Of a DNA stretch of 64,000 nucleotides, positions 1 through 63,093 are shown piece by piece. The translations under genes and the position numbers were made by a program. The stretch lies in IMG/VR virus record IMGVR_UViG_3300036760_000522, positions 62,001 through 126,000 of that record; one strand, given 5' to 3'. The notes below the pieces were generated by a model that was not told the DNA's origin, made no database searches, and saw only the letters and a program-made list of their open reading frames with translations. Each line of letters opens with the position of its first letter. Positions within the stretch are counted from its first letter, which is position 1.

Positions 1-2
1 TA

Positions 3-293
3 CTGGCTCTGCAATTGTCGGAGGTTCTACACCGCATTGGGAAACGGCCTTTAATACGACAACAACGTAGCAAGGCGTTGACACCTAAAGGCAATCCACG
101 CAAATTGGCCTACTGTGTGAATTGGGAGGGTTCAGAGTTTACCAATGCCAGTCGAAAAGGTCGGTGGTCTTTCGAAGGACAGGAACTGTCTAGGATCAAG
201 GGGATCACAAAAGTTCCATACGAAGGACCAGTATACAATTTGGAGGTCGAAGGGGATCACACGTATGTTGTGCAGGGTGTAGTGGTGCACAAT
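3..293 (+). mobile_element. Intein, C-terminal part (probable LAGLIDADG-type remnant)
   Basis: Block F/G VYNLEVEGDHTYVVQGVVVHN followed by Cys+1 (TGT at 294-296). Confidence 0.9.
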
Positions 294-737
294 TGTTACG
301 GCACCTCAATAGTTGGTGGGTACGAAGGACCGTTCGATGTCGTCATGGCCCCCGACGACGCTGAACGAAAGCATTCACAACGTGACACGGGACGTACGAT
401 CGAACATGGGTACGAGGTTTGGACGGGTCCTAGTCCACTCCTCAGTCAACGTGACTTTGTCGTCAAGATCACAGGGGACCGCTACAGCGTAGGTGCTGTC
501 CGAATGCCGACGAATCGCGGCATGGTGCTCCAACAACACTTCATGTTGGGGCATTTGGACGAGAAAGACATCAGGTATCGTGTTCCGATCGATCTCTGCA
601 ATCACGTGGTGTCTAGGTATGTAGACCGGTTGGTTCCTCCTCTCAACTCACCTGCACAAATAACGGACAAGTCAAACATACCTAGTGAGCGTCAGATTCG
701 TGGCCGCACTATTACGTGGGAAAATATCGTCTGGTGA
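3..737 (+). CDS. Putative head-completion/neck protein, 5'-partial, interrupted by an intein
   Basis: Frame is open to the window edge. After the intein end the extein begins CYGTSIVGGYEGP, resembling CxxC-x-GT-x-x-GGY zinc-knuckle neck proteins. Lies upstream of the tail genes. Confidence 0.55.
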   Translation: MALQLSEVLHRIGKRPLIRQQRSKALTPKGNPRKLAYCVNWEGSEFTNASRKGRWSFEGQELSRIKGITKVPYEGPVYNLEVEGDHTYVVQGVVVHNCYGTSIVGGYEGPFDVVMAPDDAERKHSQRDTGRTIEHGYEVWTGPSPLLSQRDFVVKITGDRYSVGAVRMPTNRGMVLQQHFMLGHLDEKDIRYRVPIDLCNHVVSRYVDRLVPPLNSPAQITDKSNIPSERQIRGRTITWENIVW

Positions 738-738
738 C

Positions 739-1218
739 ATGATCTCTCCTCCACAATTTCGAATCAACGTGAAGTCGTTGCTACCCAAGCGACGGAAGGT
801 CGAACCACGACGTGTGTTGCGAGAAGCCCAGAAGGAGATCCTCCGACAGCTTCGACGGGAGATCCAGGACACTGCATTCTCGACTCGAGCCAAGCGGGCC
901 TTGAGTCAGGGAATGACGACTCGGATCGGAAACCGAAGTCTCAAGGTTATTGCGAAGCATCCTGCCTTCTTCCCGCTTCTACGTGGACAGAAGAGCGAAC
1001 AGATGACTTGGCTTACGAAAGCGAAACGGCCTATCCCGATCATCCTAGATGATGGTACTCTGATTTTCCGGAATGCGACTCCTCGAAGCATGCAAAACGG
1101 TAGTTGGATCCATCCTGGGCGTTCTCCGACGACCGTCATCGAACGGGCACGAAAGAAGACCCGAGAGATCATTCAACGACGCGTCGTGGAGTCTTTGCGG
1201 AAGGGTCTCGGAGTTTGA
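739..1218 (+). CDS. Basic virion morphogenesis/neck-type protein
   Basis: ATG at 739 just after the upstream stop. Arg/Lys-rich with a WIHPG motif near the C-terminus. Neck-module position. Confidence 0.45.
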   Translation: MISPPQFRINVKSLLPKRRKVEPRRVLREAQKEILRQLRREIQDTAFSTRAKRALSQGMTTRIGNRSLKVIAKHPAFFPLLRGQKSEQMTWLTKAKRPIPIILDDGTLIFRNATPRSMQNGSWIHPGRSPTTVIERARKKTREIIQRRVVESLRKGLGV

Positions 1219-1219
1219 C

Positions 1220-1780
1220 ATGTCGGACGGAGGAATCACTGTTTCGAAGACAACGACGGGGGCCTTTCTAATACAAGATATCCGTGTTTATGTCGAACAC
1301 GGCAAGGCGACTTTTATACCGGCTGACAAGGTTGTGTCGTCACGGGACCTGCACCGGGCTCTCTCAGACAAACAGCTCTTTCACTTGACGAGCAGCATGT
1401 TGCAACAACAGGCACAAGATCCTCGAGTAGCTGATCTGACTCGTACAAATGAGGATCTGCGACGTCAACTCGCCGAGCAGCAAGGCCAATGGCAACGGTC
1501 TGTAGAATCGTTGGAGAAGAAATTGGACAACGTCTTGGTAGCGGTGTCTCAACAACCGAAGGTCATTACCGTTCAGGCACCTGCGGCTGAGACAGCAGTA
1601 AAGATCGATTGGGAATTGAAGGAAGGAGCTAACGATATCGTGGACGAGACTGGAACATACGTTCCGAATATCCGGGCCAAAGCGGACAGTGTGAATGTGA
1701 CTGTGACCCCCAAGACCGAAGAAGTCTCTATTGAAGAGACTGCCAAACGCTTGCGACACACTCGCCGCAAACCCTTATGA
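1220..1780 (+). CDS. Hypothetical coiled-coil protein
   Basis: ATG at 1220 follows the upstream stop. Q/E/L-rich heptads. Contains repeat copy C. Confidence 0.6.
   Translation: MSDGGITVSKTTTGAFLIQDIRVYVEHGKATFIPADKVVSSRDLHRALSDKQLFHLTSSMLQQQAQDPRVADLTRTNEDLRRQLAEQQGQWQRSVESLEKKLDNVLVAVSQQPKVITVQAPAAETAVKIDWELKEGANDIVDETGTYVPNIRAKADSVNVTVTPKTEEVSIEETAKRLRHTRRKPL
1592..1622 (+). repeat. Dispersed CRISPR-repeat-like unit, copy C
   Basis: ACAGCAGTAAAGATCGATTGGGAATTGAAGG. Last 21 nt are identical to the reverse complement of 62922-62942; 23/31 ungapped identity to 58596-58626. Confidence 0.7.
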
Positions 1781-1793
1781 ATAGTCGTGTGGT

Positions 1794-2429
1794 ATGGACC
1801 CCGTTTGGCAAGCTGTTTGGCACGATCCGACTTCTTATGACGCCCTGATTCACGGGCCGCCTTACTTGCCAACGCAAAAGCTGAGCAGCGAAGACCGATC
1901 TGAGGTTCGAGCTTTTGCTCGAAAGACTGCGGACGATCTGCGTTACGTTACTTCAGGCACCACACTATTCGGTCTTCTGGCTTGGTTGCACGCAATGAGC
2001 TTCGTACATCAAGCACACCACTGGAACACTCGAGGACAACAGTCGTATCAGGACCATCTCTTGTTCGAACGGATCTACAAGGATTCACAAGCGGGGATCG
2101 ACAGTCTGGCCGAGCGTGCGGTTACGTTGGAAGGTCCTTTGCCTTTGATTTCGCACGTGAAGCGCATCCACGAGATCATCAATGTGAATGAACTCACAGG
2201 TCAGTCCGCGACAGAAATGTTGAAAGCTAGCCTAAACGGCGAGTCCGGCTGCCTGGGTTTATTGGAGCAGTTGATGTCCGTTATGACGTTGTCCCACGGA
2301 ACGTCCAATCTCTTGGAGGGGATTGCAGATCAACACGAGGTCTTCATTTATCTGTTGAAGCAACGTCTCGCTCCCATGCCTGTTTACTCGCCGAAGACTG
2401 CGAGCGCAAAATACACATACCAACGATGA
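1794..2429 (+). CDS. Dps/ferritin-like protein
   Basis: HHWNTRG...DHLLFERIY...IDSLAER matches the Dps ferroxidase-site pattern. Confidence 0.8.
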   Translation: MDPVWQAVWHDPTSYDALIHGPPYLPTQKLSSEDRSEVRAFARKTADDLRYVTSGTTLFGLLAWLHAMSFVHQAHHWNTRGQQSYQDHLLFERIYKDSQAGIDSLAERAVTLEGPLPLISHVKRIHEIINVNELTGQSATEMLKASLNGESGCLGLLEQLMSVMTLSHGTSNLLEGIADQHEVFIYLLKQRLAPMPVYSPKTASAKYTYQR

Positions 2430-2441
2430 GATCAAAATCAA

Positions 2442-3455
2442 ATGAAAGAAGACGAAAATCCCAAATACAAGCGAGGTGTCGGACTAGACATCGGGACCAT
2501 GAACATTGTAGTCGCTCGCCAATCCCTAGCGGGTAAGGTGGTGACGACTCGGATTAGAGATGCTTTCCTCGATCTCGAGAGCGACGCGAAACGGTCTCTC
2601 AAGCTATCCAAAGTCAACTACATCGAGAAAGACGACACACTGTACGTGATCGGCGACTCAGCTTTGACAATGGCCAATTTGTTCAAGCGTGAGGCCCGGC
2701 GCCCATTGAGTCAGGGGATCATCGCTCCAGGAGAACTTGACGCACAAGAAGTTCTGGAGATCTTGATTCATGAAGTCTTGGGTCTAGCAACTGAGCCTGA
2801 CGAGCCTTGTTACTACAGCGTTCCGGCCGACCCTGTGGATCGTCCTGGTGTCGACACTGTGTTTCACACTGAGGTGTTTCGCAAAATTCTCAAAAGAGGC
2901 GGACACGACCCACATCCTACCAATGAGGCACTCGCAATCATCTACAGCCAATGTAGCGAAAACAACTTTTCTGGTTTAGCTGTGAGTCTCGGCAGCGGAA
3001 TGGTAAATGTTGCCCTTGCGTACCAAGCCAACATGGGTTTATCATTTGCACTCTCTCGCGGTGGAGACTACATCGATTCACAATCAGGAAAGTCTGTTGG
3101 CAAGACCGCAAGTCAGATGTGTACGATCAAGGAGAAGGGCCTTGATCTAGCGGCTCCAAAAACTCGCGAGGAAGAAGCGATCACGTTTTATGTCCGGGCT
3201 CTCATCAACTATTCATTGCAGAACATTTCGATCCAGTTTCGCAAGACCGCGAGTGATATCACACTACCTGAGCCAATCCCGTTCATTGTGTCTGGCGGCA
3301 CGAGTCGCGCGACTGGATTCATGGGCCTGTTCGAGGAAGAGTTTGAGTCTGTGCGAAAAAAGTTTCCGATCCAAATCAGTGAGATTCGACAAGCTCGTGA
3401 CCCCATGACAGCTGTGGCGGAAGGCCTTCTCGCGTTGGCAACCGAAGAAGAGTGA
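2442..3455 (+). CDS. Actin-like ATPase (MreB/ParM/FtsA fold)
   Basis: Phosphate-1 GLDIGT, connect-1 NEALA, phosphate-2-like SLGSGM, GGDYID, adenosine IVSGGTS, connect-2 DPMTAVAEG. Confidence 0.85.
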   Translation: MKEDENPKYKRGVGLDIGTMNIVVARQSLAGKVVTTRIRDAFLDLESDAKRSLKLSKVNYIEKDDTLYVIGDSALTMANLFKREARRPLSQGIIAPGELDAQEVLEILIHEVLGLATEPDEPCYYSVPADPVDRPGVDTVFHTEVFRKILKRGGHDPHPTNEALAIIYSQCSENNFSGLAVSLGSGMVNVALAYQANMGLSFALSRGGDYIDSQSGKSVGKTASQMCTIKEKGLDLAAPKTREEEAITFYVRALINYSLQNISIQFRKTASDITLPEPIPFIVSGGTSRATGFMGLFEEEFESVRKKFPIQISEIRQARDPMTAVAEGLLALATEEE

Positions 3456-3474
3456 GGACGTCATCTACTACTAC

Positions 3475-4641
3475 TTGGTCCAGGCGCTTAAACGCCGATT
3501 GATTCTAGAGCTTCAAGACAGTTTCTCGAAGCATCCAGTCTACCAAAAGATCGTTCCATACATCCAGAATCGGTTCTCGTTTACGGAACGCCCTCAGTTT
3601 GGGATTGTAGTCAAAGGGTCGAGCGCCAACAAAGTTGCCCTGTCTGCCGACAACTACGTCGGCACTGTCCAGAGTCACGTGATGTTGGCGTACGTTGGTC
3701 AACCAGCCTATCCTGTTGAATGGGTGCGTGAAGATCTCGCCTGTCTTAACAGCAATGGCGGGAGGATGCCGACGCTTCCAGGGGTTTACTACCTCGAAAT
3801 ATTGGAAGCTCCGACGGCTTCGAACACTCCGGGGTATTTCGTGATCGATCCTCTCTACACAGTAATTGATGAATCTCTTCTGAGATTTCAATCAGGAGTC
3901 GAAAACGATGCACAGCTCGCACAAAAGCCCGTTCAGGGAACGGTCAGGATTTGGGAGAACCGAGACTATCTTTTGCGAGAAGGTACGGACTACACCGTCA
4001 ACTACGACACGGGTGCAGTGTCTCTAGATGTGTCGTTTGGTCCGGGATCAATCCTGACCGCGGACTACCGCAGTGGCGGTACATCAATTGGCCCTGTTGA
4101 GTTCCTTTGGAACTCGAGCAACACAACCATTTTGCCGGGGGTGGTGCTGGCATTCGGTAAACGATCCGAGAAAGGTCAAAAGGTCGCCGTGGTCGTCTAC
4201 CAAGACCGTGTCGATACTGCTGAGGCCTTTGGCGGCAAATTCGAAGTCACATTCGACTTTGACGTGATCGCCCGCGATACAATTCAAATGGAAGAGATCG
4301 CAGATCTCACCATCATGTACCTTTGGGGTCAGAAGAAATCGCGCCTTGGCCTTGAGGGTATCGAGATCATCGATATCTCCATGGGCGGAGAAGCTGAAGA
4401 ACTTGCGGATGAAACAGGCGAGGAGTTCTTCTATCAAGCGAGCCTCTCATTACAGCTACGTGCGGATTGGGAGCTCCACGTGCCCTTGCCTTACGTGATC
4501 AGCAAAGTGACAGCTACGACACCTGAAGGGGACACAGATCCCAGTGCGCCATCCGGGTTACAGCCTGTGGCGAGCCAAATCTTCTTTACGACCCATCCTG
4601 TCTTGGCTGGTCGTAACGACGCGTACGAGCGGATTAGCTAG
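3475..4641 (+). CDS. Putative tail terminator/tail completion protein
   Basis: Position before the sheath gene. Beta-rich insert (EGTDYTVNYDTGAV). C-terminal FDFDVIARD...EEIADL pattern. Confidence 0.5.
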   Translation: MVQALKRRLILELQDSFSKHPVYQKIVPYIQNRFSFTERPQFGIVVKGSSANKVALSADNYVGTVQSHVMLAYVGQPAYPVEWVREDLACLNSNGGRMPTLPGVYYLEILEAPTASNTPGYFVIDPLYTVIDESLLRFQSGVENDAQLAQKPVQGTVRIWENRDYLLREGTDYTVNYDTGAVSLDVSFGPGSILTADYRSGGTSIGPVEFLWNSSNTTILPGVVLAFGKRSEKGQKVAVVVYQDRVDTAEAFGGKFEVTFDFDVIARDTIQMEEIADLTIMYLWGQKKSRLGLEGIEIIDISMGGEAEELADETGEEFFYQASLSLQLRADWELHVPLPYVISKVTATTPEGDTDPSAPSGLQPVASQIFFTTHPVLAGRNDAYERIS

Positions 4642-4721
4642 GAAAAGCTTCGCTTTCCTTCAGCTTTATTGGTAGAGATCAAAATCGTCAGATGTTGAGA
4701 GATGTTGAGAGATTAGCTAGG
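4632..4721 (+). repeat. 11-nt direct repeat GATTAGCTAGG flanking a 68-nt segment that contains a tandem GATGTTGAGA x2
   Basis: Copies at 4632-4642 and 4711-4721; tandem 10-mer at 4691-4710. Confidence 0.85.
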
Positions 4722-5146
4722 TGCCTCGCTACACGTTTCAGTGTTCTTGTGGCTTCAGGCACTCACGAGCACTCCCGATAGGGGACTACCCAACTACCAG
4801 TTGTCCGAAGTGCCAACAGGCTGCCACAAGGGTATTGGACACGTTCGGTTTCCGGTTCAAAGCCTCTAAAACCGCAGCCCCTGCCAATACTGGCGTCGCC
4901 AAGGACGACTTCCCAACGGCCGATACCGCTGTTGGGAGGGATGCCGACGCCCGTTGGGCCGAGCATGAAGCCCGGGAGAAGGTCAAGAATAGGGTCCGAG
5001 AAGTTGGTGGTCATCGAGCAATTGTACGGGAAACCCACGCTGGCTACATCGAGTACAAAGCTGCTGGCGAACCCCTGCTCAAGACTCGCAGGAAGATCAA
5101 CAATGAACTGAAGGAGGTCCTGCGACGCCCTCCTCCGGCGCGATGA
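4721..5146 (+). CDS. FmdB-family zinc-ribbon protein
   Basis: MPRYTFQCSCG...CPKC...TRV N-terminus. Confidence 0.75.
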   Translation: MPRYTFQCSCGFRHSRALPIGDYPTTSCPKCQQAATRVLDTFGFRFKASKTAAPANTGVAKDDFPTADTAVGRDADARWAEHEAREKVKNRVREVGGHRAIVRETHAGYIEYKAAGEPLLKTRRKINNELKEVLRRPPPAR

Positions 5147-5859
5147 CTCCGCACGATCAGCTTCGGCCTTGTATTGTGTACTCCGCCAGGTGTGACGTAA
5201 ACGGTAAGTTGTATTTTGGGATCCGAAAACACATAAACACAGCTAAACGCGGTTCGCATTACATTTTCCATGCGGCTTTACGTAAATACGGAGCTTCCAA
5301 TTTTGTGTGGACCGTTTGTGAAATCACAAATTGGCGTGGAGCTTGTGCGTCAGAGATCCGACTCATTGAAGAACACGACACGTGTAACCAGAACAAAGGT
5401 TACAACACTGCAAAAGGTGGCAACGGCACGTTAGGATTCAGCCTCCCAACGGAAACGCGGCGTAAGATTAGTTCGTCACTGAAAGCGTGGCACGCTTCGG
5501 GAGATCCGAAAGCACAAGCGCTTAGAGCAAAGGTGAGTCATGTGCGCCGCACTATGGAGACTAGCCTAGCCACACGGTTGAAGCGTGCTGAAGTCAGTCG
5601 AGGTCGGGGACTGTCTAAAGAGTCTCGATCCAAACTACGCGCTTCAAAGCGTAAGTATTCGGACGCCATAGTAGCTGAAGCGACCAACTACGCTAAACAG
5701 CACGGTTATCGAGCAGCAGAAAGGGCTTTCAACATCCCGCGACCCACAATTCGCCGCTGGTCCAGAACCCCGGAGGAGCAAGACGAAGCCCGACGCCTAA
5801 TGCGAGAAAACCATCGTAAACGACAGTACGGCTACGCTTTTCCTCTTGTAGGCCCCTGA
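5143..5859 (+). CDS. Free-standing GIY-YIG homing endonuclease with NUMOD3-like repeats and a C-terminal HTH, possibly degenerate
   Basis: IVY...GKLYFG, FHAALRKYG, EIRLI, GYN..KGG, ETRRKISSS. Confidence 0.75.
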   Translation: MTPHDQLRPCIVYSARCDVNGKLYFGIRKHINTAKRGSHYIFHAALRKYGASNFVWTVCEITNWRGACASEIRLIEEHDTCNQNKGYNTAKGGNGTLGFSLPTETRRKISSSLKAWHASGDPKAQALRAKVSHVRRTMETSLATRLKRAEVSRGRGLSKESRSKLRASKRKYSDAIVAEATNYAKQHGYRAAERAFNIPRPTIRRWSRTPEEQDEARRLMRENHRKRQYGYAFPLVGP

Positions 5860-5965
5860 TGGTTAAAAACACTGCCCCGAACCCAATACCACTGTCCCAA
5901 TTTCAATATCCGATCCCAAAACCACATTCGATCCCAAAAACCGCTAGTTCGAAGTGAGGTCATCA

Positions 5966-8900
5966 ATGAGTATTGGTCCATTTTCAACATACGTACCCCC
6001 AGGCGTCTACACCCGCACATTGACTGAAGCCAACGCGGCCAATCTGGTTGCTGGCCTTAGGATCCCGGCCGAAATCGGAGTCGGGCAAGAGGAACTCGAG
6101 CAGTTGGATCTCGAGTTGGTTCGTGGGTCATCATCGAACCTCGACCAACAAATCATCAACGAAGACGTATCTACGCGCTTTGTTGTCGACGAGACCAATC
6201 CGAACAACCCGGTGCTTGGTTCGCCCAACGGGCTCGTAGCTAAGTTCAAAGTACGAAACTACCCGATTGTTGATGGTCAAGGATTCGGCAAAACTACGAA
6301 CAGCGTTCGTAGTGTCACAGTCACGATCAACGGGACCCCGGTTGCTGTTGGTGCAGTCCAAGGCACGCCTGGCTACGTCACCTTGCAGGTTCCTCCACAA
6401 ACAGGGGACAACATCCGGTGCACGTACTACTTCCACCGATCGGATACGAGTTTTCAAGACGACGTTTCAGAGCAAGTGACTGCGGAGCTTGCCGAGCTCA
6501 CGTCACCAGGGTACGCGTCTTTCATCATCGTTACCGGTACAACCGACACGTTCGTCATCGAAGTCGACGGTGTCTCCTTGACTTTGCTCTTTGCAGCCGG
6601 GACCTACACCGCGACTGGTTTGAAGAGCGTCATCGATTCGTACCTGGTTTCCGGACTCGCGACGGCAGTTTATGTCGACGGACAAGGGCGTAGCCATCTC
6701 AAGTTTTCAGCAGCGCGTAGCGTCAAGATCGGCAGCGGGAATGCCAACGGTGCTCTTGGGTTCGCGACTAACACACAGACGAATCGAAATGCTATTTTCC
6801 GTGTTTTTCAGCGGCCAATCGTGGACGGTACAGACGGTGGAATCACGACTACGGATCCCACCAAAGTTGTCGTGACTGTGAACAACGTTCAAGTTGTCGC
6901 AACCGCAGTCGATGGGTCAAATGGGCTTGTCACACTACCGTATGCGCCTGCCAATGGTTCGACAGTCAGGATCCAGTATTTCGCCAACACGTGGCAAGAC
7001 ACGTTCGACTATTTGCCGAATACCTTGGTGACGAGTGTCATTCGATCTGGTTTTGCACCCGGTCGCAACGACTACATCGAAAACCAAGACTTCGTCATCT
7101 CGAATCCGAGCCCTGATGTTTCGATCATGCATTGGGGTGCGAGTTTCGATGTCGCTAGTACTTTGCGATCAGCGGGCGCCACGCTCCTCAATGAAGTACA
7201 GATCCTTCCAACACTTGTTGACGATAGAATCTACCTCGCCGAGGCCGAGCATTTTGTCGATACGACGGTTGTTCCTGCGGTCGCATCGTCAACAGTATTT
7301 CTCTTGCCGGATGTGCCGACTACTGGCAACGGACGAGACACACCACTCAGCTCAGCAACCTTCGGAGCTGTGACGAACGGTCGAATCGGACTCAATACCA
7401 ATCGACCGGATTTGGTGATCGTCTACACGGGCCGCGATTTGCAGGACGCTCTTGGGCGTGGAGCTGTGGCGGTTGTCGAGGTCGATGGTACGACGCGCAA
7501 CATCACACTCAAAGATCCTGTACCGCCCGACCACATCGCGTTTTGCACGTTTTGGTACAATCGATTGCGTGACGATACATACATCCTGACCAACAAAGTG
7601 GCAGGTCCGATTGGTACGGGACAATTCGAAGTCCTCTCGACCTTGACAGGATTGAACGTTCTTCAAGTTCGATTTGGTATCAAGACAGGGTTGCCAGAGA
7701 CAGTGCAATGGCCACGTGGTGTCGAGCAAATCTCAGACGCGTTCCACACTGGAGCCGGTGCCCCTGTTGCTGAAACAGTAACTGTACTTTTCGGTACGAG
7801 TCTTGCGAAAAATGCGGTCTTCACGAATGAAGGCGCAGCTCCCTATTCGTTCTTCACGACGTACTCCAACAACTGGCGAACGACGATCAACGGTACATCA
7901 CTGGTCACCAACCTTGGCACGTCAGCCAGAGGTTTCTTGGTTTCTAGTCGTGTTCCAGTGAGCGGGCTGAACCAAATCAGTATCCCTGTTTCCCCGAACA
8001 ACGTCCTTGAACTCACCATCGACGGCACGGACGTCACGGTGGCGGTGACAGCTGGGCTACGCACACCTGCTCAAATCGTGACAGACATCAACGCAGCAAT
8101 CGACGCAGCAGCGGCCTTCATCGGCACAGCTCCCAACGTCCTTGCTTCGTTTGTCCAGATCGGCGGCTCTGGTGGTGACGCAGTCTTCATCGTTCAGTCG
8201 TACTCAGCGCCTGCGGCACTGCCTGGAGGCTTCGATCACGCGTCTGTGATTTCAGTTCGTCAGGGAACGGTCGAGGCAGTACTTGGCTACGACACGTTCC
8301 AGACCGCGTCCGGGACGCCTACTGCGACGAACAAACCTGCAACCTTGTTGGGAACGGTTGCAGGTCCTTTCACGATCACGGCCGATGTCGACGACGAACT
8401 CATCATCCGAGTCGACGGAATCGACTACACGATCACGTTGCCGGCGGGAGCGGCTGTGACAGCCGCAGCTGTTGTCGCGTCAATCGCGGCTCTCCCAGGG
8501 CTTACCTCAGTTCCAAGCGTCGGGACTTTGGCGAACCTCAACAAGATCCGTTTGACGAGTACGTTGACAGATCCAAGCTCAGGTATTCAGATCCTGAGCG
8601 GGACAGCCAACGCGATCCTCGGCTTCACTGAGGGCGACATTGCAAGCCAAACGCTCGTCACAGCTATCGAAGTCATCGATCGCTTGAACTCGACAGTAGG
8701 GTTCCTCACTGACGGCTTCGCCTACGTGGGCGAGATCGACGGCCAAGAATACGTCACGATCGAGTCGTTGACGACGGGTGCGACAACTTCATCCGTCGCT
8801 TTCGCTGACGGGACCGCGAGTGCCTTCAACGTCTCGACTGGAACTCAAATCGTTCCTGGTACGAGCGGTGACAATGGGGAGAGCTCGTACGGTAACTTTA

Positions 8901-17900: not shown

Positions 17901-19173
17901 CGTCGGTAGCATCAAAGTCTTCAATCCACCTGATGAAGCGTCGGCGGCTCTTGATACTGTCGAGGCCATCAAGCAAAATTTGGCTCTCGGAGCCAATGTC
18001 ACAGATCACGCTATTTTGTGTCGAACCAACAAAGAGCTTCACGCGTTTGAAACTGCGTGCATCATTCGTGGCGTTCCCTACGCACGCAAAGGGGCGTCGA
18101 GCTTTTTCGGATCCCCAGAAACCAAAGCAGTCCTTGGTTATGTACAACTCGTGACCGGAACAGATCCCATCAAGATGCAGGGAGCTTTGGCCGATGCCAT
18201 CAACAAACCCAATCGCTTCTTCATTGATCCAAAGAAGGGCGCAGAGGCTGTTGAGAGGGCTATCGTCGACTACGCACGGACAAAGCAACAAGACCCTAAG
18301 ACTATTGATCCTGTCGAAGCGTTGTCTGATCGCGGTTTCGTTAACGGACTTGCTCGTCGCCTTCTCGACTTGAAGGGTGGACGTGGTCGGGATTTTGATC
18401 ACAAGCTCCGTGAGCTGGGAGACGCTCTGAAGGAGATGCGTGCTTTGGCACAGACAGGGGGCTACACGACTCGAGACTTGTTCGATCAAATCTTGGGACT
18501 TGAAGGGACTGCAATCGTTGGCGGGAAGTTCATTGAGCAGACTTTCCGTGAAACACTGCAAGCTGATTTGAAGGATCGTGTCGGCGACGAAACGGATGAC
18601 GATGAAGAAGAGGAAGACGAAACTGATCCGACTCGCGGACTCGGCAACGTCTCATTCCTCTACAAGCTCTCTGAAATTGACCCCACTGACGAAGACGATG
18701 CCCTGACACCTCCCACAACTCCCGCTGGTTTCAAATCCAAGATGGAACGTTACGCGGCTAGAATGCGGGATCTTCGTACCGACGTCACTGCGTGGTACAA
18801 GAAACAGTCAGCTCTTCCACCCGAACAAAGAACGCCTCCACCAGGAACTTACGTAGGGACAGTGCATAGTGTAAAAGGCGCTCAATGGCCCAACACTTAT
18901 GTGTCAATGCCGGCTGGTAAGTTTCCTTTCAACATCCCAAAACGTCCAGGTGAACCGCCGCCTGATCCAGATGAAGTCAAAGACCAAGTCGAGGGAGAGC
19001 GTCGCCTTGCTTACGTCGCCTTGACTCGCGCTGCTAAGAATTTGACCATCATTTGCCCGGGCGAAGTGGGAGGAAAGCCCGCTGGCGTCAGCGTGTTCGT
19101 CGCTGAGGCAAAACTCAAAGTCGGAGAGAATGTCGTGGCGATCGGAACTGAATCACCAACGGCGGAGGGTTGA
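14983..19173 (+). CDS. UvrD/PcrA-like SF1 helicase with N-terminal extension and intein
   Basis: AGAGAGKS, TTFNNKAA, GTMHS, VDEAQD, VGDDKQ|SINAFQGA, TNYRC, LCRTN, TVHSVKG, ERRLAYVALTRA. Confidence 0.93.
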   Translation: MSTATDVMRVFHSSEDEDEVVGEFQVAEYIIFLLALDTYMRYAEESSGVDDIEDAIIRRGLQILRRAEADLENYGSFLEEHLSTPVQKQMLKRALSFKSFTPNGMARRALQFRTLLSRGGAQTVRAVFESNKYIRQMREAIAASMMEDADKALDIFAAMPLRNSRFRVWVDESAKQAGSGESAPQPVEAASNESSSEIRQELLVQQVQSTVAVGAEAARDAKDSRSALLEQTENEAREAAKRSIEVNQQRDEPLTRSEVVGVAAAAAMAATTDPSNPQNIPESLRALDDEQRAAALTNGRVVVAAGAGAGKSFTLVQRVTYLVKEQRVGPSRILVTTFNNKAAEELKEKIGKSLGGQVLQQMSVGTMHSLFSRFISEHGTPEERQAMQAPRFMRDGLSIAGAVQRMWSDCYGTKRPTPRMRTMLAYKSQWSGNGITPAEALATVPPRKEAQDAATWYTMYEGLKGTLPDWRPPCQSNSYTRFMSQNRGDGSRLGDFSDMLLIFRDILKRSPVVQSAVQKMFDHVIVDEAQDRNTIMAEIIEMISGHINEDSQDKSLWIVGDDKQCVHVDTLVDVPGNRRVRAGGLRVGAQVLSYRNSKVTPQIVESVTKSDWAYGFKVVTASGRSLTMSPNHRIWASEINPEIEDRIVYLMHRPNLGFRVGVTTNGRTKKGRRSIRSRMAMENADKLWILKLCGDYEEALLEESSYSLTYGIPTVVFNGVWRDLNQDRLDEVFRRFGKNGMKLLEASNLDFDHPHVTAYASGNGRVARRVIQMLAHHSKGTLVSLEWTGDDLDSPLKAAQVIFQSTGPRRRLRKHCNSYRDAISFATTLKGLTGAIINRRLSRHELEEPYQLIPAAGLFPGMRLVVLEGEDAVDSEEITSIDRVEGSFVDLSVDDASNFFGNGILSHNSINAFQGARAELFTSLWDQPGWKTRAITTNYRCEPEIVDAANALIANNEDQIPMEARADPRKVRGVGSIKVFNPPDEASAALDTVEAIKQNLALGANVTDHAILCRTNKELHAFETACIIRGVPYARKGASSFFGSPETKAVLGYVQLVTGTDPIKMQGALADAINKPNRFFIDPKKGAEAVERAIVDYARTKQQDPKTIDPVEALSDRGFVNGLARRLLDLKGGRGRDFDHKLRELGDALKEMRALAQTGGYTTRDLFDQILGLEGTAIVGGKFIEQTFRETLQADLKDRVGDETDDDEEEEDETDPTRGLGNVSFLYKLSEIDPTDEDDALTPPTTPAGFKSKMERYAARMRDLRTDVTAWYKKQSALPPEQRTPPPGTYVGTVHSVKGAQWPNTYVSMPAGKFPFNIPKRPGEPPPDPDEVKDQVEGERRLAYVALTRAAKNLTIICPGEVGGKPAGVSVFVAEAKLKVGENVVAIGTESPTAEG
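16675..17706 (+). mobile_element. Intein (344 aa) in helicase motif III
   Basis: Starts CVHVDTLV, has block B TMSPNHRIW, ends NFFGNGILSHN before Ser+1. Removal restores GDDKQSINAFQGA. Confidence 0.92.
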
Positions 19174-23362: not shown

Positions 23363-24541
23363 ATGTCCGACGTCTCGTACCAAGCTGAGCAGGAAAAACT
23401 CGCTCAGGAACGGGACGGTCAAAGACTGATCGACATTCCAAGTAGTGCGCCAGAGGTCAACCCAGAGCTTTACAAGGACATAGAGCCCATACTGTTTCGT
23501 GGGTTTCTTCACACGACGACCACTATCAACGGGGTCAGGTTCGTGTTCAAGTCCGTGAACCACCACGAACTTGCTAGGCTGCGTTTCGAGGAGCCGCAAG
23601 GGTTTTCGACAGAACAGTCTCAGCGTTTCAACGCACTGTTTTTGGCCTACGGCGTTCTCATGATCGACGGTCAAAGCGTTCTTCGTGTGCGTGAACACTG
23701 GATGTCACAAGTTGCGGATCTGTTCTACGATCTTGGGGAAGCAATTCAAAAACGGGTTGTCATTGAACTAGGAGATCTCAACCGACGAGCGAATCGAGCC
23801 ACAACACTGACAGAAGCCTACGCGATGGAAAATGCATCGCGGCTTCGTTGGGCACAGCTCCGAGGCCTGGACTTGGCAAGCTCATCAGTAACCGGCATTG
23901 AGGGAACCGACAAGCTGGGGCTCAATTGGGCACAGCTCACTTGGCGGGCCATCAACTATTATGAAGACCAGCGTGACAATGCAGAACGAGAATGGGAGAA
24001 CGCGAAGTTCGTTGCCAGCGCCATGGCTGGGAAGGGCATGCAAAAAGTCCACAACGACGATCGTCGTCGCAAGGAACAAGAACGGAATGCGAAACAAGAA
24101 AGGAAGGACCGGCTCTTTCGCTATGCCCTCTTAGGCGAGTCTCTTGACGTGACCGTTGAAAAAGGAACTCCAATTCGAGTCGCACGCAGCGTCGAGGAAC
24201 TGGCTACCCAGCTCGAACGTGATTTGAAAGGCGAGAAGGATTGGCACGATCGTGTCGTTGACGAGCACGATCGAAAAGTACGTGAAGCCCAAGAACGGCG
24301 TAGTCAACAGCTTCAAGCGTTCCAGCAAAGTTACGAAGAACAGTACGGATCGAAATCAGTTATCGGCTCGTCTGATATGCAAGGGCTCACGCCTGAAGAG
24401 GTCAAGTACCAAATCACGAGACGGAAACAAATCACAGCTCAACGCTTAGCGTCGCTCCAAGTACACCCAGAATTTGCTGATCAGAAACAAGCTGAGTTTG
24501 CCAACAAATGGCGAAACGTAATCACGAGAGTTGACCGATAA
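23363..24541 (+). CDS. Putative second tail assembly chaperone
   Basis: Directly precedes tape measure; related LAYGVLMIDG motif; charged C-terminus. Confidence 0.55.
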   Translation: MSDVSYQAEQEKLAQERDGQRLIDIPSSAPEVNPELYKDIEPILFRGFLHTTTTINGVRFVFKSVNHHELARLRFEEPQGFSTEQSQRFNALFLAYGVLMIDGQSVLRVREHWMSQVADLFYDLGEAIQKRVVIELGDLNRRANRATTLTEAYAMENASRLRWAQLRGLDLASSSVTGIEGTDKLGLNWAQLTWRAINYYEDQRDNAEREWENAKFVASAMAGKGMQKVHNDDRRRKEQERNAKQERKDRLFRYALLGESLDVTVEKGTPIRVARSVEELATQLERDLKGEKDWHDRVVDEHDRKVREAQERRSQQLQAFQQSYEEQYGSKSVIGSSDMQGLTPEEVKYQITRRKQITAQRLASLQVHPEFADQKQAEFANKWRNVITRVDR

Positions 24542-27500
24542 TGGCGGGCGAGACTGAAGTCCTAGACCTTACTGTCAACACCAAGAAGGCCTTGGCCGAG
24601 ATGGAGCGGTGGCAGCGAGAGACTGTCGACGCACTCCAGAAGATCATGAAGGTCACGTCGGAGCTTGGCTTCGACACACAGAAGGTTGCCAAGAAAGCCA
24701 TTGACGCTCAAACCGATTGGGCCGACAGTGCTCGCGACCTCTTCAAAGTCTACCGCCAAGAGGGGAAAGAAATCGACGACATCAAAAGACAGGTGACAGA
24801 ACTTGCCAGCAAGTTTGATGACGCAAGCGAGACAGAGCAGAAGGCCATCGCGAAACAGGTCAAAGAATATCAGAAACTTGGCAAGGTCAAAGTAGAAGCA
24901 CTCAAGGAGCGTGGAGAGCTAGGCAAGGGTCTTCGAGACACCTCTGCGGCAGCTGCTGACGCCTTCAAGGAGTCCCTACGGAGTGTCTTCGGTCGAGACC
25001 TCAAAGGGCTCGTAGAGAGCGGTAGCAAGGCAGCAGCGAAGAGCTTCAAGATCCTGCCCGCTGCGTGGAAGGTCTTCAAAGGAGGGGCCAAGGGAGGTGC
25101 AGCTGGCGGAGCTAAGGGTGCAGCTGCGTCAGCTGGCGGAGCTGGCAATGCTCTCAAAGGCGTCGGTGACCTCGTTAAAGCGATCAAACCAATGATTAGC
25201 ATGGCGACAGCAGTCGGCGCTATCGCAGGTTCTGTGGTCATGCTCATCAAGTTGTTTCTGGATCTCGATTCGGCTGCAAAGGAGTTCAACAAGAGCTTGT
25301 TACAGTCTGCTGGTACAAGCGGGTTCCTTGCTCAACGTGGAGGGGATGTTGACGCAGCATACCAGGATGTGGAAACCACACTGCGAGGCGTTCGAGACGC
25401 GGCGAACAGCTCCGAAAACATGCAGTGGGGGATCACGCCCGCCGATCACCAAAACCTCATGAACAATCTGAATCAGGAGGGAATCACACTAAACAGTATT
25501 GGCAAACAAGGTGGCGACTCCGCAGAGGGTGTCCAGAAGCTTGCCACAAGTTTGGTCCACACTGGCGTTGCGTACTCGAGAGCGTTTGGAGTTCCATTAC
25601 AAGAAATCGGTCAGCTTCAAGCCGAGATGGCTCACGAGATGGGGATCTCTCTGAACAATACGAGTCATGAGTTCGAGAGAATCGCACAAACGGCTGATGA
25701 GGCTGGGATCGGAGCTGTCAAGTTCTTCGGCATGATTCGAGGTGTTTCACAGGACTTGTCGTTGTGGGGTTTGCGCATGGAGGACGCGACGACCATTCTC
25801 GGAAAACTGATGAAGAACATGACGCCGAGAGAAGCACAGAAGTTCTTCCAAACTCTTACGCAGGGCTTCAAGGGAATGGGTCGCATGGATCTCGTCCGAA
25901 AGGCGTTCATGGGGGACCTGAAAAAGACGCGCGTGACCATGGAGTCAGAGATCCAACGAATGTCTCGCAATACCGCAGAGGAACTTGGCGCGGGCCTCGG
26001 ATACAATGAAGATCAGATCCGCGACCTGCAACAAAAGATCACAGCTGGTGGCGCCAGCGCGATTACTGATCTTTTGCCGAAGGTGTCTGAGGAGGTGCGA
26101 TCTTCGGTTTCAAGTGCTGTCTCACATCTCGAGACACAACAAAGAAGGCTCTCGAGAGGTACCGTGATGGGGTTGGCTGAAGCTATGGCTGATGCTGGAC
26201 CTGCGGCAGCCGCTGAAATTCGACGACAAACCATGTTATCTCGGACTGGTTTCAAGTCACTCAAGGAAGCTGAAGGAGCTAAAGGCGGTGACGCTGTTGC
26301 TTTCATTGCAGAAGCATTGGGAGAGAGCGTCGAGGCTGTTCGTGAATTAGGAATGTTTGAAGAACACGTTCAGACACAACAACAAAAGTTGATATCTGAA
26401 CTGGCAGATCCCAAGACGATGGAGGCTACTCAGAAGAAGTTGTCCAAAGCCGGGATCAAAGGATCCAAAGAAGCGATCGAAAACGCCAGCTGGTCGGCAA
26501 TCTGGGAAACCATGTCAAAGGATCAGCAAAAGCTGATCAAAGGTGAAAAAGAAACGATAGATTACGCCAAGAGAACAGCTGATTTTCAGACCAGTTTTAT
26601 CCAGAAATTCGAAGCCTTGATGGGCTTCGTCATGAACCAGATCTACAACATCATGATCGATGTTTGGGACGCCATCACGTCCTTAACAAATTGGGGTGGG
26701 GGTATTGAGAAGACTCTCAAGAGAGCCGTGATGGCGTCCAAGAGTCAAGAGACAGCTAAGATTTACGAAGAAACTAAAGGCGATCCAGGTAAATTCAAGG
26801 ACGCGCTTCGCGATCAAACGGACTACGCTGCGAATCTTGGCAACGCTTTGAAAGGTGAAAACTCCGCCGAGATAGAAGACATGATCACCAAGTCACTTTC
26901 GCTGTTGTCCACAAAGGAGGCTGCTAGCGCAGCTGGAATCACGAATGTCGGAGGTAAAACAAACATCGATGAAATCATCGACAATCTGCAAGGCGAAGAA
27001 CGTTCCAAGTTTTTCGAGAAAGCAGGTACGTGGTTCGTAGACGCAGCCAAAATGGTCGAGCTGCAAAGCAAATTTGAGAGCGTTGCAAAAACTGCTGGTG
27101 ACACGGCTAAAGGAGCAACAGAGGGTGCAACAAGGACAGGTGTCACGACTGTTGAACGTGCTGGGGCTCCTGCTGCAACAAGGACAGGTGTCACGACTGT
27201 TGAACGTGCAGCACCAGTTGCTCCCGCGGTCAGCGAGGCAACTGGTGAAGCTTTAGGACTGTCTAGTGAACAAACGTCTTCGTTGCAGTCGATCGACAAC
27301 CAGTTGGATCGACTGAAAATGGACACAGGCTTCCTGAGCGGACCTTACGCTAACACACTCGAGAACTCGATGCTGGCGGCGCTTAGAACCGCCTTGTTTG
27401 AGTACTACCTCTACAAGGACATGAACCAAGCGGACGTACTTGGTACCATGGTTAGCGGAGGTTTCACTGGGCGATCGTTTTCACAAGCTGTTGGAGCTCA

Positions 27501-27789
27501 GGCCCAAACGGGACAAATCAACTTGAACGATTTGCCTGTGGCTGGGGCTAACGCAACGGGAGGTGTCGTCTCGAACGTTAGCGGTGGACTAGCTTTGGTG
27601 AGGGCCGCAGCCGGTGAGGGCCTCGCTTCGGTTGGACGGGGTGAAACAATTGCGCCAAGAGGAGGTGGCAGTACGGGTGGGATTTCGATACAAGTTAACG
27701 GCGTAGGCGGCCAAGACCTGGCTAGAATCATCGAGACCAAGGTCATCGACGGGATCCACGAATACAAGCGTCGTGAGAGGTTCACGTAA
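24541..27789 (+). CDS. Tape measure protein
   Basis: 1082-aa Ala/Gly-rich helical protein in canonical position; C-terminal ATGG and ISIQVNG motifs. Confidence 0.8.
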   Translation: MAGETEVLDLTVNTKKALAEMERWQRETVDALQKIMKVTSELGFDTQKVAKKAIDAQTDWADSARDLFKVYRQEGKEIDDIKRQVTELASKFDDASETEQKAIAKQVKEYQKLGKVKVEALKERGELGKGLRDTSAAAADAFKESLRSVFGRDLKGLVESGSKAAAKSFKILPAAWKVFKGGAKGGAAGGAKGAAASAGGAGNALKGVGDLVKAIKPMISMATAVGAIAGSVVMLIKLFLDLDSAAKEFNKSLLQSAGTSGFLAQRGGDVDAAYQDVETTLRGVRDAANSSENMQWGITPADHQNLMNNLNQEGITLNSIGKQGGDSAEGVQKLATSLVHTGVAYSRAFGVPLQEIGQLQAEMAHEMGISLNNTSHEFERIAQTADEAGIGAVKFFGMIRGVSQDLSLWGLRMEDATTILGKLMKNMTPREAQKFFQTLTQGFKGMGRMDLVRKAFMGDLKKTRVTMESEIQRMSRNTAEELGAGLGYNEDQIRDLQQKITAGGASAITDLLPKVSEEVRSSVSSAVSHLETQQRRLSRGTVMGLAEAMADAGPAAAAEIRRQTMLSRTGFKSLKEAEGAKGGDAVAFIAEALGESVEAVRELGMFEEHVQTQQQKLISELADPKTMEATQKKLSKAGIKGSKEAIENASWSAIWETMSKDQQKLIKGEKETIDYAKRTADFQTSFIQKFEALMGFVMNQIYNIMIDVWDAITSLTNWGGGIEKTLKRAVMASKSQETAKIYEETKGDPGKFKDALRDQTDYAANLGNALKGENSAEIEDMITKSLSLLSTKEAASAAGITNVGGKTNIDEIIDNLQGEERSKFFEKAGTWFVDAAKMVELQSKFESVAKTAGDTAKGATEGATRTGVTTVERAGAPAATRTGVTTVERAAPVAPAVSEATGEALGLSSEQTSSLQSIDNQLDRLKMDTGFLSGPYANTLENSMLAALRTALFEYYLYKDMNQADVLGTMVSGGFTGRSFSQAVGAQAQTGQINLNDLPVAGANATGGVVSNVSGGLALVRAAAGEGLASVGRGETIAPRGGGSTGGISIQVNGVGGQDLARIIETKVIDGIHEYKRRERFT
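27126..27209 (+). repeat. Exact 36-nt direct repeat with 48-nt period in the tape measure gene
   Basis: TGCAACAAGGACAGGTGTCACGACTGTTGAACGTGC at 27126-27161 and 27174-27209. Confidence 0.95.
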
Positions 27790-57118: not shown

Positions 57119-57144
57119 ACATGTGCACGACACCGAGAATCATT

Positions 57145-57221: not shown

Positions 57222-57254
57222 AAATTCATTTATGGTCCTTCAAGGGCAAGGCTT

Positions 57255-57566: not shown

Positions 57567-57572
57567 ACGTTG

Positions 57573-58595: not shown

Positions 58596-58626
58596 GTAAC
58601 AGTAGAAAACGGTCGGGAATTGAAGG
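58596..58626 (+). repeat. Dispersed CRISPR-repeat-like unit, copy B
   Basis: GTAACAGTAGAAAACGGTCGGGAATTGAAGG, preceded by an AT-rich flank and abutting a tRNA 5' fragment. Confidence 0.65.
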
Positions 58627-62854: not shown

Positions 62855-62921
62855 TGGCGTCCCATGACGGATTCGAACCGTCGCTACCTGCGTGAGAAGC
62901 AAACGTCCTGAGCCACTAGAC
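62855..62921 (-). pseudogene. tRNA-Glu(CTC), positions 1-9 missing
   Basis: Begins at D-stem GTC immediately after repeat copy A; loop TTCTCAC; CCA present. Confidence 0.75.
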
Positions 62922-62951
62922 CCTTCAATTCCCAATCGATCTGATCCCTAC
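62922..62951 (-). repeat. Dispersed CRISPR-repeat-like unit, copy A
   Basis: GTAGGGATCAGATCGATTGGGAATTGAAGG, with an AT-rich upstream flank similar to copy B. Confidence 0.7.
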
Positions 62952-63093
62952 TTACGCGGATCACAAAACAAAGAAACAAGTTTGTGGGCAGATCGGTACC
63001 TTGGTGGGCACCGATCTGCCACACGAGTGAAAAACACGAATTGTCAAAAAGCAAGGTCCTCGAAAGGACTTTTGAAGAGACCTGAAGTCTCAG

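What the first reader, a model, noticed from the sequence alone, without database searches (positions are those of the whole stretch)
1592..1622. Repeat-like unit embedded in-frame in a coding linker
Copy C is read as TAVKIDWELK inside an otherwise Ala/Pro/Thr-type linker of ORF 1220-1780. A 21-nt exact match to a non-coding site 61 kb away is unlikely by chance. It suggests the unit can land in genes and is kept when the frame survives.
Basis: partly seen in the sequence, partly recalled or inferred. Interest (0 to 1): 0.6.

Follow-up and report, generated by a model that had tools for sequence, protein, structure and literature searches.

The report
Phage regulatory box inserted in-frame
A short control sequence that an uncultured 300-kb sediment phage uses about 18 times, mostly just in front of genes, has also been copied into the flexible linker of one protein gene, where it adds seven amino acids; this is a tidy but modest case of regulatory DNA spreading within a genome.

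Summary
Window 1602-1622 (+) is an exact 21-nt reverse-complement match of 62922-62942, and it is read as KIDWELK in ORF 1220-1780.

It is not an isolated pair. The window lies in a 301,550-bp jumbo-phage record. That genome carries about 18 copies of a box with core TGGGAAyTGAAGG, often preceded by ATCGAT and by GGTAGrGATC. Eleven copies lie in the small-gene arm at 257-296 kb. Six to nine sit 0-35 nt upstream of a co-oriented start codon, against 2.4% expected. Several sit at heads of divergent operons.

An 87%-identical orthologue lacks exactly 21 nt (7 aa) here. Four more distant orthologues and 146 family representatives lack the peptide too, so the block is a derived insertion.

A run with a different sample and study code carries the insertion allele. 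Another run carries the short allele, plus exact copies of the 21-mer at other loci.

The partner copy abuts a tRNA-Glu(CUC) that lacks its 5' acceptor strand.

Best reading: a lineage-specific promoter or 5'-leader box ending in a Shine-Dalgarno-like GAAGG, copied into a tolerant linker. The copying mechanism and promoter activity are inferred, not shown. Interest is moderate.

The parts
1220..1780 (+). ORF of 186 aa (P0001). It has a conserved N-terminal domain, a coiled-coil middle, a variable linker and a conserved C-terminal part. It belongs to an unannotated family of proteins about 190 aa long.
   Evidence: No Pfam or PHROG hit; the NCBIfam matches are far below their cut-offs. A profile search finds 303 clusters at E<=1e-3.
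1588..1627 (+). Window-specific patch. About 40 nt here replace about 19 nt of the 87%-identical orthologue, a net gain of 21 nt (7 codons). The flanks are about 90% identical at the nucleotide level.
   Evidence: DNA alignment A2. A contig of the relative in X4 leaves out 21 nt in total between 1588 and 1624.
1598..1622 (+). Embedded regulatory box, GTAAAGAT-CGAT-TGGGAATTGAAGG. The core is 1610-1622. The exact 21-mer shared with copy B is 1602-1622. It is read as (V)KIDWELK.
   Evidence: It has the top weight-matrix score in the genome (32.0 bits), tied with copy B.
1618..1642 (+). Shine-Dalgarno-like GAAGGAAGGAG (1618-1628) created by the insertion, followed 11 nt later by an in-frame GTG (1640-1642). 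This is a possible internal start for a 46-aa C-terminal product. Inference only.
   Evidence: Sequence. One search lists a GTG 17 nt after the box that opens 46 codons in the called frame. The orthologue has no such Shine-Dalgarno sequence. Shine-Dalgarno-type 5-mers are enriched upstream of this phage's genes.
1794..2429 (+). Next gene downstream, Dps/ferritin-like, starting 171 nt after the box. It is a candidate target if the embedded box is an active promoter.
   Evidence: Pfam Ferritin E=4.9e-10 and phrog_3636. Distance.
62922..62951 (-). Copy B, the full-length box GTAGGGATCAGATCGATTGGGAATTGAAGG. It carries the 21-mer at 62922-62942.
62855..62921 (-). tRNA-Glu(CUC) remnant directly 3' of copy B. 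The D, anticodon and T arms and the 3' acceptor strand with CCA are present. The 5' acceptor strand is missing, and the box occupies its place.
   Evidence: Rfam tRNA at 34.2 bits matches model positions 9-63 only. ARAGORN can only build an aberrant 67-nt fold by using the D-arm bases as acceptor stem.
62962..63020 (-). 14-bp hairpin (62987-63020) followed by a T-rich tract, just upstream of copy B on the tRNA strand. It looks like a terminator.
   Evidence: Fold of the 70 nt upstream gives -31.6 kcal/mol, lower than all 400 control windows. A second small terminator-like hairpin lies at 63069-63056.
58608..58626 (+). Weaker copy A (AACGGTCGGGAATTGAAGG, 23.6 bits), in the spacer 3' of tRNA-Ala. 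It is oriented against the neighbouring minus-strand genes.
18488..18506 (+). Marginal copy (20.6 bits, core TGGGACTTGAAGG) inside a plus-strand helicase-like ORF. It may be a chance match.
   Evidence: The ORF 14956-19173 hits a PHROG helicase family.

Best explanation
The window comes from an uncultured jumbo phage from sediment, 301.5 kb long with a 127-bp terminal repeat. Its genome carries a lineage-specific family of about 16-18 copies of a 20-30-nt regulatory box. The full form is GGTAGrGATCrGATCGAyTGGGAAyTGAAGG. The box sits immediately 5' of genes and ends in a Shine-Dalgarno-like GAAGG. I read it as a promoter-proximal or 5'-leader element that marks one class of transcription units. 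These are mostly small accessory, early-type genes such as a Tad2-like anti-defence gene, an RRM protein and a GmrSD_N-like protein. The box also precedes a block of tRNA genes. In the lineage of this genome, a near-consensus copy was written into the hypervariable linker of ORF 1220-1780. This was a short illegitimate or templated recombination patch, not a classical transposition. The patch adds a net 21 nt. It is read in one of the box's two open forward frames (the third contains TGA), and it lies in a linker whose length varies freely in the family. So the protein tolerates it as the extra peptide KIDWELK. The copy may now act as an internal promoter for the Dps-like and actin-like genes downstream, or as an internal ribosome-binding site. 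It may equally be a neutral passenger. What is shown: the exact match, the family, its positional bias, the derived state of the insertion, and both alleles in nature. What is inferred: promoter or leader function, the copying mechanism, and any activity of the embedded copy.
For: Exact 21-nt match. The genome holds 6 copies at 3 or fewer mismatches against 0 for the control, and 18 copies stand apart by a score gap of 20.6 versus 12.1 bits. Eleven of the 18 lie in 257-296 kb, which is 13% of the genome. Six of 18 have a called, co-oriented gene start within about 40 nt downstream, against 2.4% of random positions. My binomial arithmetic on those numbers gives about 3e-6. Three more have a plausible ORF start 7-78 nt downstream, one of them a confirmed RRM gene. 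Copies at 275627, 282686 and 286625 fill divergent-gene junctions, which are operon heads. Conservation stops right after GAAGG in every copy. GAAGG-type 5-mers are enriched about 4-fold upstream of this phage's starts, with 4-12 nt spacing. Copy B follows a strong hairpin and T-tract and precedes tRNA genes. On derived state: P0002 lacks 7 aa or 21 nt, four further orthologues are short, and 146 family members lack the peptide while their linker spans 20-37 residues. On alleles: an X3 contig covers 1555-1785 with 0 differences, X4 record 20 carries the short allele, and X4 record 21 carries two exact copies elsewhere. One of those abuts a 93%-identical homologue of G000:810-839, where G000 has no box. 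The box is absent from the more distant relatives G001 and G002 (68% identity in the actin-like protein) and from eight other related loci.
Against: No transcription start data exist, because no RNA run holds this phage. There is no sigma-70-type -35/-10 pattern around the box, and no phage RNA polymerase was found by Pfam, so the recognising factor is unknown. Spacing between the upstream GTAG element and the core varies (5, 8 or 13 nt), which fits a leader or operator box as well as a promoter. Copy A and the copy at G000:278216 point against their neighbours. The embedded copy is 171 nt from the next start, further than most. My gene calls come from a home-made caller that gives a Shine-Dalgarno bonus, so the start-distance and Shine-Dalgarno statistics are partly circular. 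The weight matrix was trained on its own hits. The indel is not clean, and only one close relative is available to date it.
Confidence: 0.6

Rival explanations
1. The box works at the RNA level. It would be a conserved 5'-UTR module, such as a translational operator for a phage RNA-binding protein or a processing site, that includes the ribosome-binding site. The embedded copy would then be an internal translation start or a cleavage site inside the mRNA.
For: The box ends in GAAGG, with start codons 0-8 nt downstream in at least six copies. Spacing to the upstream GTAG element varies. At 282686 a perfect TTGACA-N17-TAGCGT lies upstream, so there the box would fall within the transcript (sequence). 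The phage encodes an RRM protein whose own gene is preceded by the box. Copy B sits exactly at the 5' edge of a tRNA body, where processing occurs.
Against: The box sits at operon heads in divergent junctions and directly after a terminator-like hairpin, which fits transcription initiation. No conserved RNA secondary structure is evident in the box, and only copy B has a strong hairpin just upstream. There is no direct evidence either way.
Confidence: 0.2
2. The unit is a genuine miniature mobile element, analogous to MITEs or Rickettsia palindromic elements. It would spread by a dedicated enzyme and be retained in genes whenever the frame survives.
For: It is a multi-copy family. The two perfect-consensus copies are the two in disruptive contexts, inside a coding sequence and replacing the 5' end of a tRNA. 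There are at least two presence/absence differences between phages about 90% identical. In-frame insertion of repeats into ORFs is documented for Rickettsia palindromic elements (PMC10969869).
Against: The unit is 20-30 nt long, not 100-400 nt. It has no terminal inverted repeats and no palindromic fold. There is no clean target-site duplication, and the indel replaces about 19 nt with about 40 nt. Its strong orientation and distance bias toward gene starts is that of a regulatory site. No transposase or other candidate was linked to it.
Confidence: 0.1
3. The match is incidental or convergent. The linker would have evolved the sequence by point mutation, either under selection for a new internal promoter or for the peptide KIDWELK, without copying from another site.
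For: Both identical copies simply equal the family consensus over 19-21 nt, so identity does not by itself prove a donor-recipient pair. The linker is hypervariable.
Against: The difference from the 87%-identical orthologue is a 21-nt length gain concentrated in one patch, while the flanks are about 90% identical. Building a 21/21 consensus match by substitutions and small indels within that divergence is very unlikely. About 1e-3 chance matches are expected per window. The peptide occurs in no other family member.
Confidence: 0.04

Closest known systems
Reused or 'mobile' promoters in prokaryotes (Nijveen, Matus-Garcia and van Passel 2012, PMC3575422)
   Same: Highly similar short 5' regulatory sequences occur upstream of unrelated genes within one genome. 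This implies that promoters are copied separately from their genes.
   Different: Those cases are intergenic and usually longer. Here one copy lies in-frame inside a coding sequence and another has replaced the 5' end of a tRNA gene. Promoter activity is not demonstrated here.
PeSL (promoter-early stem-loop) cassettes of T4-like phages (PMC2839356, PMC4122927)
   Same: Both are short repeated regulatory motifs in a large phage genome. Both are concentrated among small variable genes and coincide with indels between closely related phages.
   Different: PeSLs are composite terminator-plus-sigma-70-early-promoter units that mediate swapping of whole ORFs by homologous recombination. Here only 1 of 18 copies has a strong upstream stem-loop. 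There is no sigma-70 consensus. The event seen is insertion of the motif itself into a gene.
Rickettsia palindromic elements and other intragenic MITEs (reviewed in PMC10969869)
   Same: A repeat is inserted in-frame into a protein-coding gene, translated as an extra peptide, and tolerated by the protein.
   Different: Those elements are about 100-150 bp and palindromic, and have no gene-start bias. This unit is 20-30 nt, non-palindromic and positioned like a regulatory site.
Phage-specific promoter consensus families such as the T7 class II/III promoters (own knowledge, not tested here)
   Same: A conserved box about 20-30 nt long is repeated through a phage genome. It ends at or near the transcript start with a purine-rich Shine-Dalgarno-like segment.
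   Different: No single-subunit or multisubunit phage RNA polymerase was detected. There is only a sub-threshold sigma-70/ECF-like hit in one ORF.

Membership tests
Dispersed phage promoter / 5'-leader box | Many copies of one conserved short motif in the genome, well above chance | tested here: met
   Six copies at 3 or fewer mismatches against 0 for the control. Eighteen copies stand apart by a score gap. Shuffled genomes give 0-5 hits at the 14-bit threshold against 18 observed.
Dispersed phage promoter / 5'-leader box | Positioned upstream of genes and co-oriented with them, including at operon heads | tested here: met
   Six of 18 copies have a called start within about 40 nt, against 2.4% of random positions. 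Three copies sit at divergent junctions. Two copies are anti-oriented.
Dispersed phage promoter / 5'-leader box | Transcripts start at or just after the motif | not testable with these tools
   No RNA run holds this phage.
Dispersed phage promoter / 5'-leader box | A cognate polymerase or sigma factor is identifiable | tested here: inconclusive
   No match to PF00940, PF00562 or PF00623. Sub-threshold Sigma70_r2/ECF hits occur in one 408-aa ORF. The AlphaFold model was unusable, with pLDDT 33.5.
MITE / RPE-like intragenic mobile element | Terminal inverted repeats or a palindromic fold | tested here: not met
   The 30-nt consensus has no inverted termini (sequences). The only palindromes are GATC and ATCGAT.
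MITE / RPE-like intragenic mobile element | A clean filled versus empty site with target-site duplication | tested here: not met
   About 40 nt replace about 19 nt, and only an ambiguous AAG repeat is seen at the edges.
MITE / RPE-like intragenic mobile element | In-frame insertion into an ORF that is absent from orthologues | tested here: met
PeSL composite cassette | Stem-loop terminator joined to an early sigma-70 promoter | tested here: not met
   Only copy B has a strong upstream hairpin. No sigma-70-type sites were found.
PeSL composite cassette | Coincides with indels between close relatives in regions of small variable genes | tested here: inconclusive
   One indel in a coding sequence and one further presence/absence difference seen only through 30 nt of a contig. 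Eleven of 18 copies lie in the small-gene arm.
tRNA-derived repeat or att core | The unit folds as, or matches, a tRNA 3' half | tested here: not met
   The reverse complement resembles a T-loop (TTCAATTCC) but has no pairing 5' stem. Rfam and ARAGORN call no tRNA over the box.

The most novel reading that the evidence does not exclude
The box is a self-propagating micro-cassette of about 25-30 nt, combining a promoter or leader with a ribosome-binding site. It would be actively copied to new sites in this jumbo-phage lineage by a specific process, for example templated repair of endonuclease breaks. That process would rewire expression, and would occasionally write new peptides into proteins and destroy genes such as the tRNA-Glu(CUC).
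Probability: 0.15. Interest if true: 0.7.

Novelty: new variant of a known kind. Interest (0 to 1): 0.4.

Why it matters
If the box is a promoter or leader element, this locus is a naturally occurring before-and-after pair. Two phages about 90% identical differ by the presence of a consensus regulatory box inside a gene. That shows regulatory motifs in large phage genomes can be copied to new places at the scale of a few tens of bases. The copy can create a potential internal promoter or start and a new peptide in a single event. It gives a concrete, testable example for 'promoter reuse' and for how intragenic promoters and nested genes arise in phages. It also defines a candidate regulon in an otherwise unannotated jumbo phage, including a Tad2-like anti-defence gene, an RRM protein and tRNA genes. 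The phage is uncultured and its host unknown, so the practical reach is limited for now.

Tried and rejected
- **Close relatives in IMG/VR:** a search by the ORF's own peptides found none. The orthologues came from the word search, the neighbouring actin-like gene and one metagenome scan.
- **The 19-mer across IMG/VR:** one hit, in an unrelated 11-kb contig with no other similarity. I treated it as chance.
- **The box in relatives:** absent from the distant relatives G001 and G002, with counts equal to the control. Also absent from L007, L021-L023 and L028-L031.
- **Recovering X4 contig 21** (two more exact copies): I searched for orthologues of G000 genes 455-832 and 835-1275. No protein of that strain was found, so the contig could not be read.
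- **tRNA cluster in G001:** a DNA search found no match, so the ancestral state of tRNA-Glu(CUC) is unknown.
- **PeSL-like architecture:** upstream folding is unremarkable for 17 of 18 copies.
- **Phage RNA polymerase or sigma factor:** Pfam searches were negative or sub-threshold, with no PDB sequence match. The single-sequence AlphaFold model had pLDDT 33.5 and was not searched further.
- **tRNA-derived origin of the box:** rejected, because there is no fold and no model match.
- **A fuzzy regex search** timed out and was replaced by blastn-short.
- **Shuffle control:** imperfect, because it reuses successor lists, so I rely on arithmetic and the genome-wide family instead.

Full report
**1. 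The observation**

ORF 1220-1780 (+) encodes 186 aa. Window 1592-1621 is read as TAVKIDWELK inside the stretch QAPAAE...EGAND. The repeat scan reports 1602-1622 and 62922-62942 as a 21-nt, 100% complementary inverted pair (I5). About 1e-3 such exact matches are expected by chance in a 64-kb window (my arithmetic). My own shuffles were imperfect.

**2. Where the window lies**

The window is bases 62001-126000 of a 301,550-bp IMG/VR virus record with direct terminal repeats. I found the repeat to be 127 bp, exact.

- GC content is 53%.
- The window carries a baseplate-hub-like and a helicase-like ORF.
- It also carries an intein fragment, a Dps/ferritin-like gene and a Volactin-family actin-like ATPase.
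- A minus-strand cluster of at least 14 tRNA genes lies at 56.7-63.4 kb.
- Runs that hold the sequence are sediment metagenomes.

This is an uncultured jumbo phage.

**3. The 21-mer belongs to a family**

In the whole genome the 21-mer has 6 matches at 3 or fewer mismatches, against 0 for the reversed control. The 12-mer core has 7 exact matches and 15 at one mismatch or fewer. About 1.3 of those 15 are expected by chance. An iterated weight matrix gives 18 hits between 20.6 and 32.0 bits, and the next best hit scores 12.1. The matrix is self-trained, but the gap is wide.

The aligned copies show three layers:

- an invariant core, TGGGAAyTGAAGG;
- a usually present ATCGAy just upstream;
- in six copies, a further GGTAGrGATCrG, giving a unit of about 31 nt.

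Similarity ends right after GAAGG in every copy. The two copies in this finding are the two best in the genome (32.0 bits each). Their 21-nt identity is identity to the family consensus.

The embedded copy also keeps a recognisable upstream element. It reads GTAAAGAT where the family reads GTAGrGAT, with a shorter spacer. The inserted unit is therefore about 25 nt (1598-1622), not just 21.

**4. Where the copies sit**

Eleven of the 18 copies lie in 257-296 kb, a region of small genes in both orientations.

Six have the start of a called, co-oriented gene within about 40 nt downstream. Only 2.4% of random positions do, which gives a binomial P of about 3e-6 by my arithmetic. Start codons follow the box by 0, 7, 7, 8, 28 and 35 nt. 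Three further copies precede plausible ORFs that my crude caller missed. One of these is a clear RRM protein (Pfam 6.6e-19).

Three copies fill divergent intergenic junctions and so sit at operon heads.

Genes behind the box include:

- a Tad2-like anti-Thoeris protein;
- an RRM protein;
- a GmrSD_N-like protein;
- a zinc-ribbon protein;
- an AAA ATPase;
- several small hypothetical proteins.

GAAGG-type words are enriched about 4-fold upstream of this phage's starts, at 4-12 nt. That statistic is partly circular, because my caller rewards Shine-Dalgarno sequences.

Two copies point against their neighbours: window 58608-58626 and G000:278216.

**5. The partner copy**

On the minus strand the order runs as follows:

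1. tRNA-Gln(CUG);
2. a small terminator-like hairpin;
3. a 14-bp hairpin with a T-rich tail, whose fold energy of -31.6 kcal/mol is below all 400 control windows;
4. the full-length box (62951-62922);
5. a tRNA-Glu(CUC) body, with no spacer;
6. tRNA-Asn and one more tRNA.

Rfam aligns only model positions 9-63 of the Glu gene (34.2 bits). The 3' acceptor strand and CCA are present, but nothing upstream can pair with them. ARAGORN can only produce a 67-nt fold with the anticodon at position 26, by borrowing D-arm bases as an acceptor stem. So the box occupies the place of the first 8 or so nucleotides of a tRNA gene. This is a second case in which a consensus copy sits in a disruptive position.

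**6.

The word search found one orthologue, P0002 (179 aa), on a 12.5-kb JGI contig (L007) with the same gene order. The MAFFT alignment gives 87% identity with a single 7-residue gap opposite (V)KIDWELK.

At the DNA level the flanks are about 90% identical. One patch differs: about 40 nt in the window against about 19 nt in L007, a net gain of 21 nt.

Four more orthologues (35-37% and 24% identity) all have the short state or an unrelated linker.

A profile search finds 303 clusters of this unannotated family of proteins about 190 aa long. In an alignment of 146 members, only the window's protein contains IDW, DWEL or WELK. The linker between two conserved anchors varies from 20 to 37 residues. 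It is 34 in the window's protein and 27 in its closest relative.

The block is therefore a derived, lineage-specific insertion into a length-tolerant linker.

**7. Read and contig support**

Logan contigs were laid on window 1-6000, within the 6,000-letter limit.

- **X1**, the probable source, spans the whole stretch with no differences.
- **X3**, with a different sample and study code, has a 231-nt contig covering 1555-1785 with no differences. The insertion allele is therefore not a private assembly artefact. Both flanks of the insertion belong to the same gene, which also rules out a chimeric join.
- **X4** holds a relative at about 91% identity. Its 6,461-nt contig lacks 21 nt in total between 1588 and 1624, which is the short allele. 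Its product is P0073, a 179-aa protein in the same 90% cluster as P0002.
- **X4** also has an 8,618-nt contig with two exact copies of the 21- and 23-mer, 5.8 kb apart and in opposite orientation.

One of those two copies is followed by 30 nt that are 93% identical to G000:810-839. In G000 the preceding 21 nt are unrelated coding sequence. So the family predates the split of these two phages, and at least two copies differ in presence between them. I could not fetch that contig.

**8. Phylogenetic range**

The box is absent from two IMG/VR jumbo contigs whose actin-like protein is 68% identical. Their counts equal the control. It is absent from all other related loci fetched. The single IMG/VR hit to the 19-mer is in an unrelated contig and is consistent with chance. 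The box is specific to this narrow lineage.

**9. What it most likely is**

Four features describe a gene-proximal regulatory element rather than a selfish repeat:

- its position and orientation relative to starts;
- its presence at operon heads and after a terminator;
- the abrupt end of conservation at an SD-like GAAGG;
- the accessory, early-type nature of the genes behind it.

Whether it acts as a promoter on DNA or as a leader or operator on RNA cannot be decided here.

- No RNA run holds the phage.
- There is no sigma-70-type pattern.
- Pfam detects no phage RNA polymerase.
- One ORF gives only sub-threshold sigma-70/ECF hits, and its model was unusable.

I put promoter or promoter-proximal box at about 0.6 and a purely RNA-level element at about 0.2.

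**9a. The embedded copy**

The forward frames of the 21-mer read AGA TCG ATT GGG AAT TGA (stop), DRLGIE and IDWELK. Two of the three frames are therefore open, and the net length change is a multiple of three. This matches 'kept when the frame survives'.

The insertion also creates GAAGGAAGGAG 11 nt before an in-frame GTG at 1640. It lies 171 nt before the Dps-like gene. An internal promoter or an internal start is possible, but neither was tested.

**10. How it got there**

The patch is not a clean insertion. It has no inverted termini and no clear target duplication, so classical transposition is unlikely. A short ectopic, templated or illegitimate recombination event that copied a consensus box is the most economical reading. 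This is inference.

The closest described phenomena are:

- promoter reuse in prokaryotes (PMC3575422);
- PeSL cassettes of T4-like phages (PMC2839356, PMC4122927), although only one copy here has the stem-loop;
- in-frame Rickettsia palindromic elements (PMC10969869), which are much larger and palindromic.

I therefore rate it a new variant of a known kind, of moderate interest.

Noticed in passing
window 62855-62921 (-): A tRNA-Glu(CUC) gene lacks its 5' acceptor strand. The regulatory box directly abuts the D-arm. It is probably a pseudo-tRNA created when the box arrived.
   Followed up: partly
window 2442-3455 (+): A Volactin-family actin-like ATPase (PF25216, E=8.5e-70) encoded by a jumbo phage. 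It is conserved at 68% identity in two other IMG/VR jumbo contigs of 142 kb and 309 kb.
   Followed up: partly
window 3-737 (+): The C-terminal part of an ORF contains an intein splicing block (...VVVHNC; weak PF14890 hit). The related contig L007 has DUF559-like and intein-like genes at the same place.
   Followed up: no
window 1794-2429 (+): A Dps/ferritin-like gene (PF00210, phrog_3636) lies directly downstream of the ORF with the insertion.
   Followed up: no
window 56700-63400 (-): A tRNA cluster, all on the minus strand. ARAGORN genes and Rfam adds 3-4 more (for example 62701-62773, 56782-56849 and 57738-57815).
   Followed up: partly
G000:C1:295626-296120 (+) = L003:1529-2023: A Tad2-like (Thoeris anti-defence 2) gene, PF11195 E=6e-14, with the box 7 nt upstream of its ATG.
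   Followed up: partly
G000:C1:269358-269711 (+) = L005:2199-2552: An RRM-type RNA-binding protein (PF00076, E=6.6e-19) preceded by a box copy. That copy's upstream 25 nt are nearly identical to those of the copy at G000:286625.
   Followed up: partly
G000:C1:263587-264813 (-) = L024:919-2145: A 408-aa ORF with sub-threshold sigma-70 region 2 / ECF-type hits (E=0.009 and 7e-4) and a box copy at its 5' end. The single-sequence structure model was unusable.
   Followed up: partly
X4 contig 'record 21' (8,618 nt; not retrievable) versus G000:C1:789-839: A related strain has an exact box copy abutting the homologue of G000:810-839, which is the end of gene 455-832. G000 has unrelated coding sequence at that spot. 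If that copy lies in coding sequence, it would be read in the same IDWELK frame.
   Followed up: partly
window 27126-27161 and 27174-27209 (+): An exact 36-nt direct repeat, 48 nt apart, inside the 1082-aa ORF 24541-27789.
   Followed up: no
window 1220-1780 (+): The host ORF belongs to a large, completely unannotated family of proteins about 190 aa long (303 clusters at 50% identity). It has a conserved N-terminal DGGITVSK...DLHRAL domain and a C-terminal RLRQLRK motif.
   Followed up: partly
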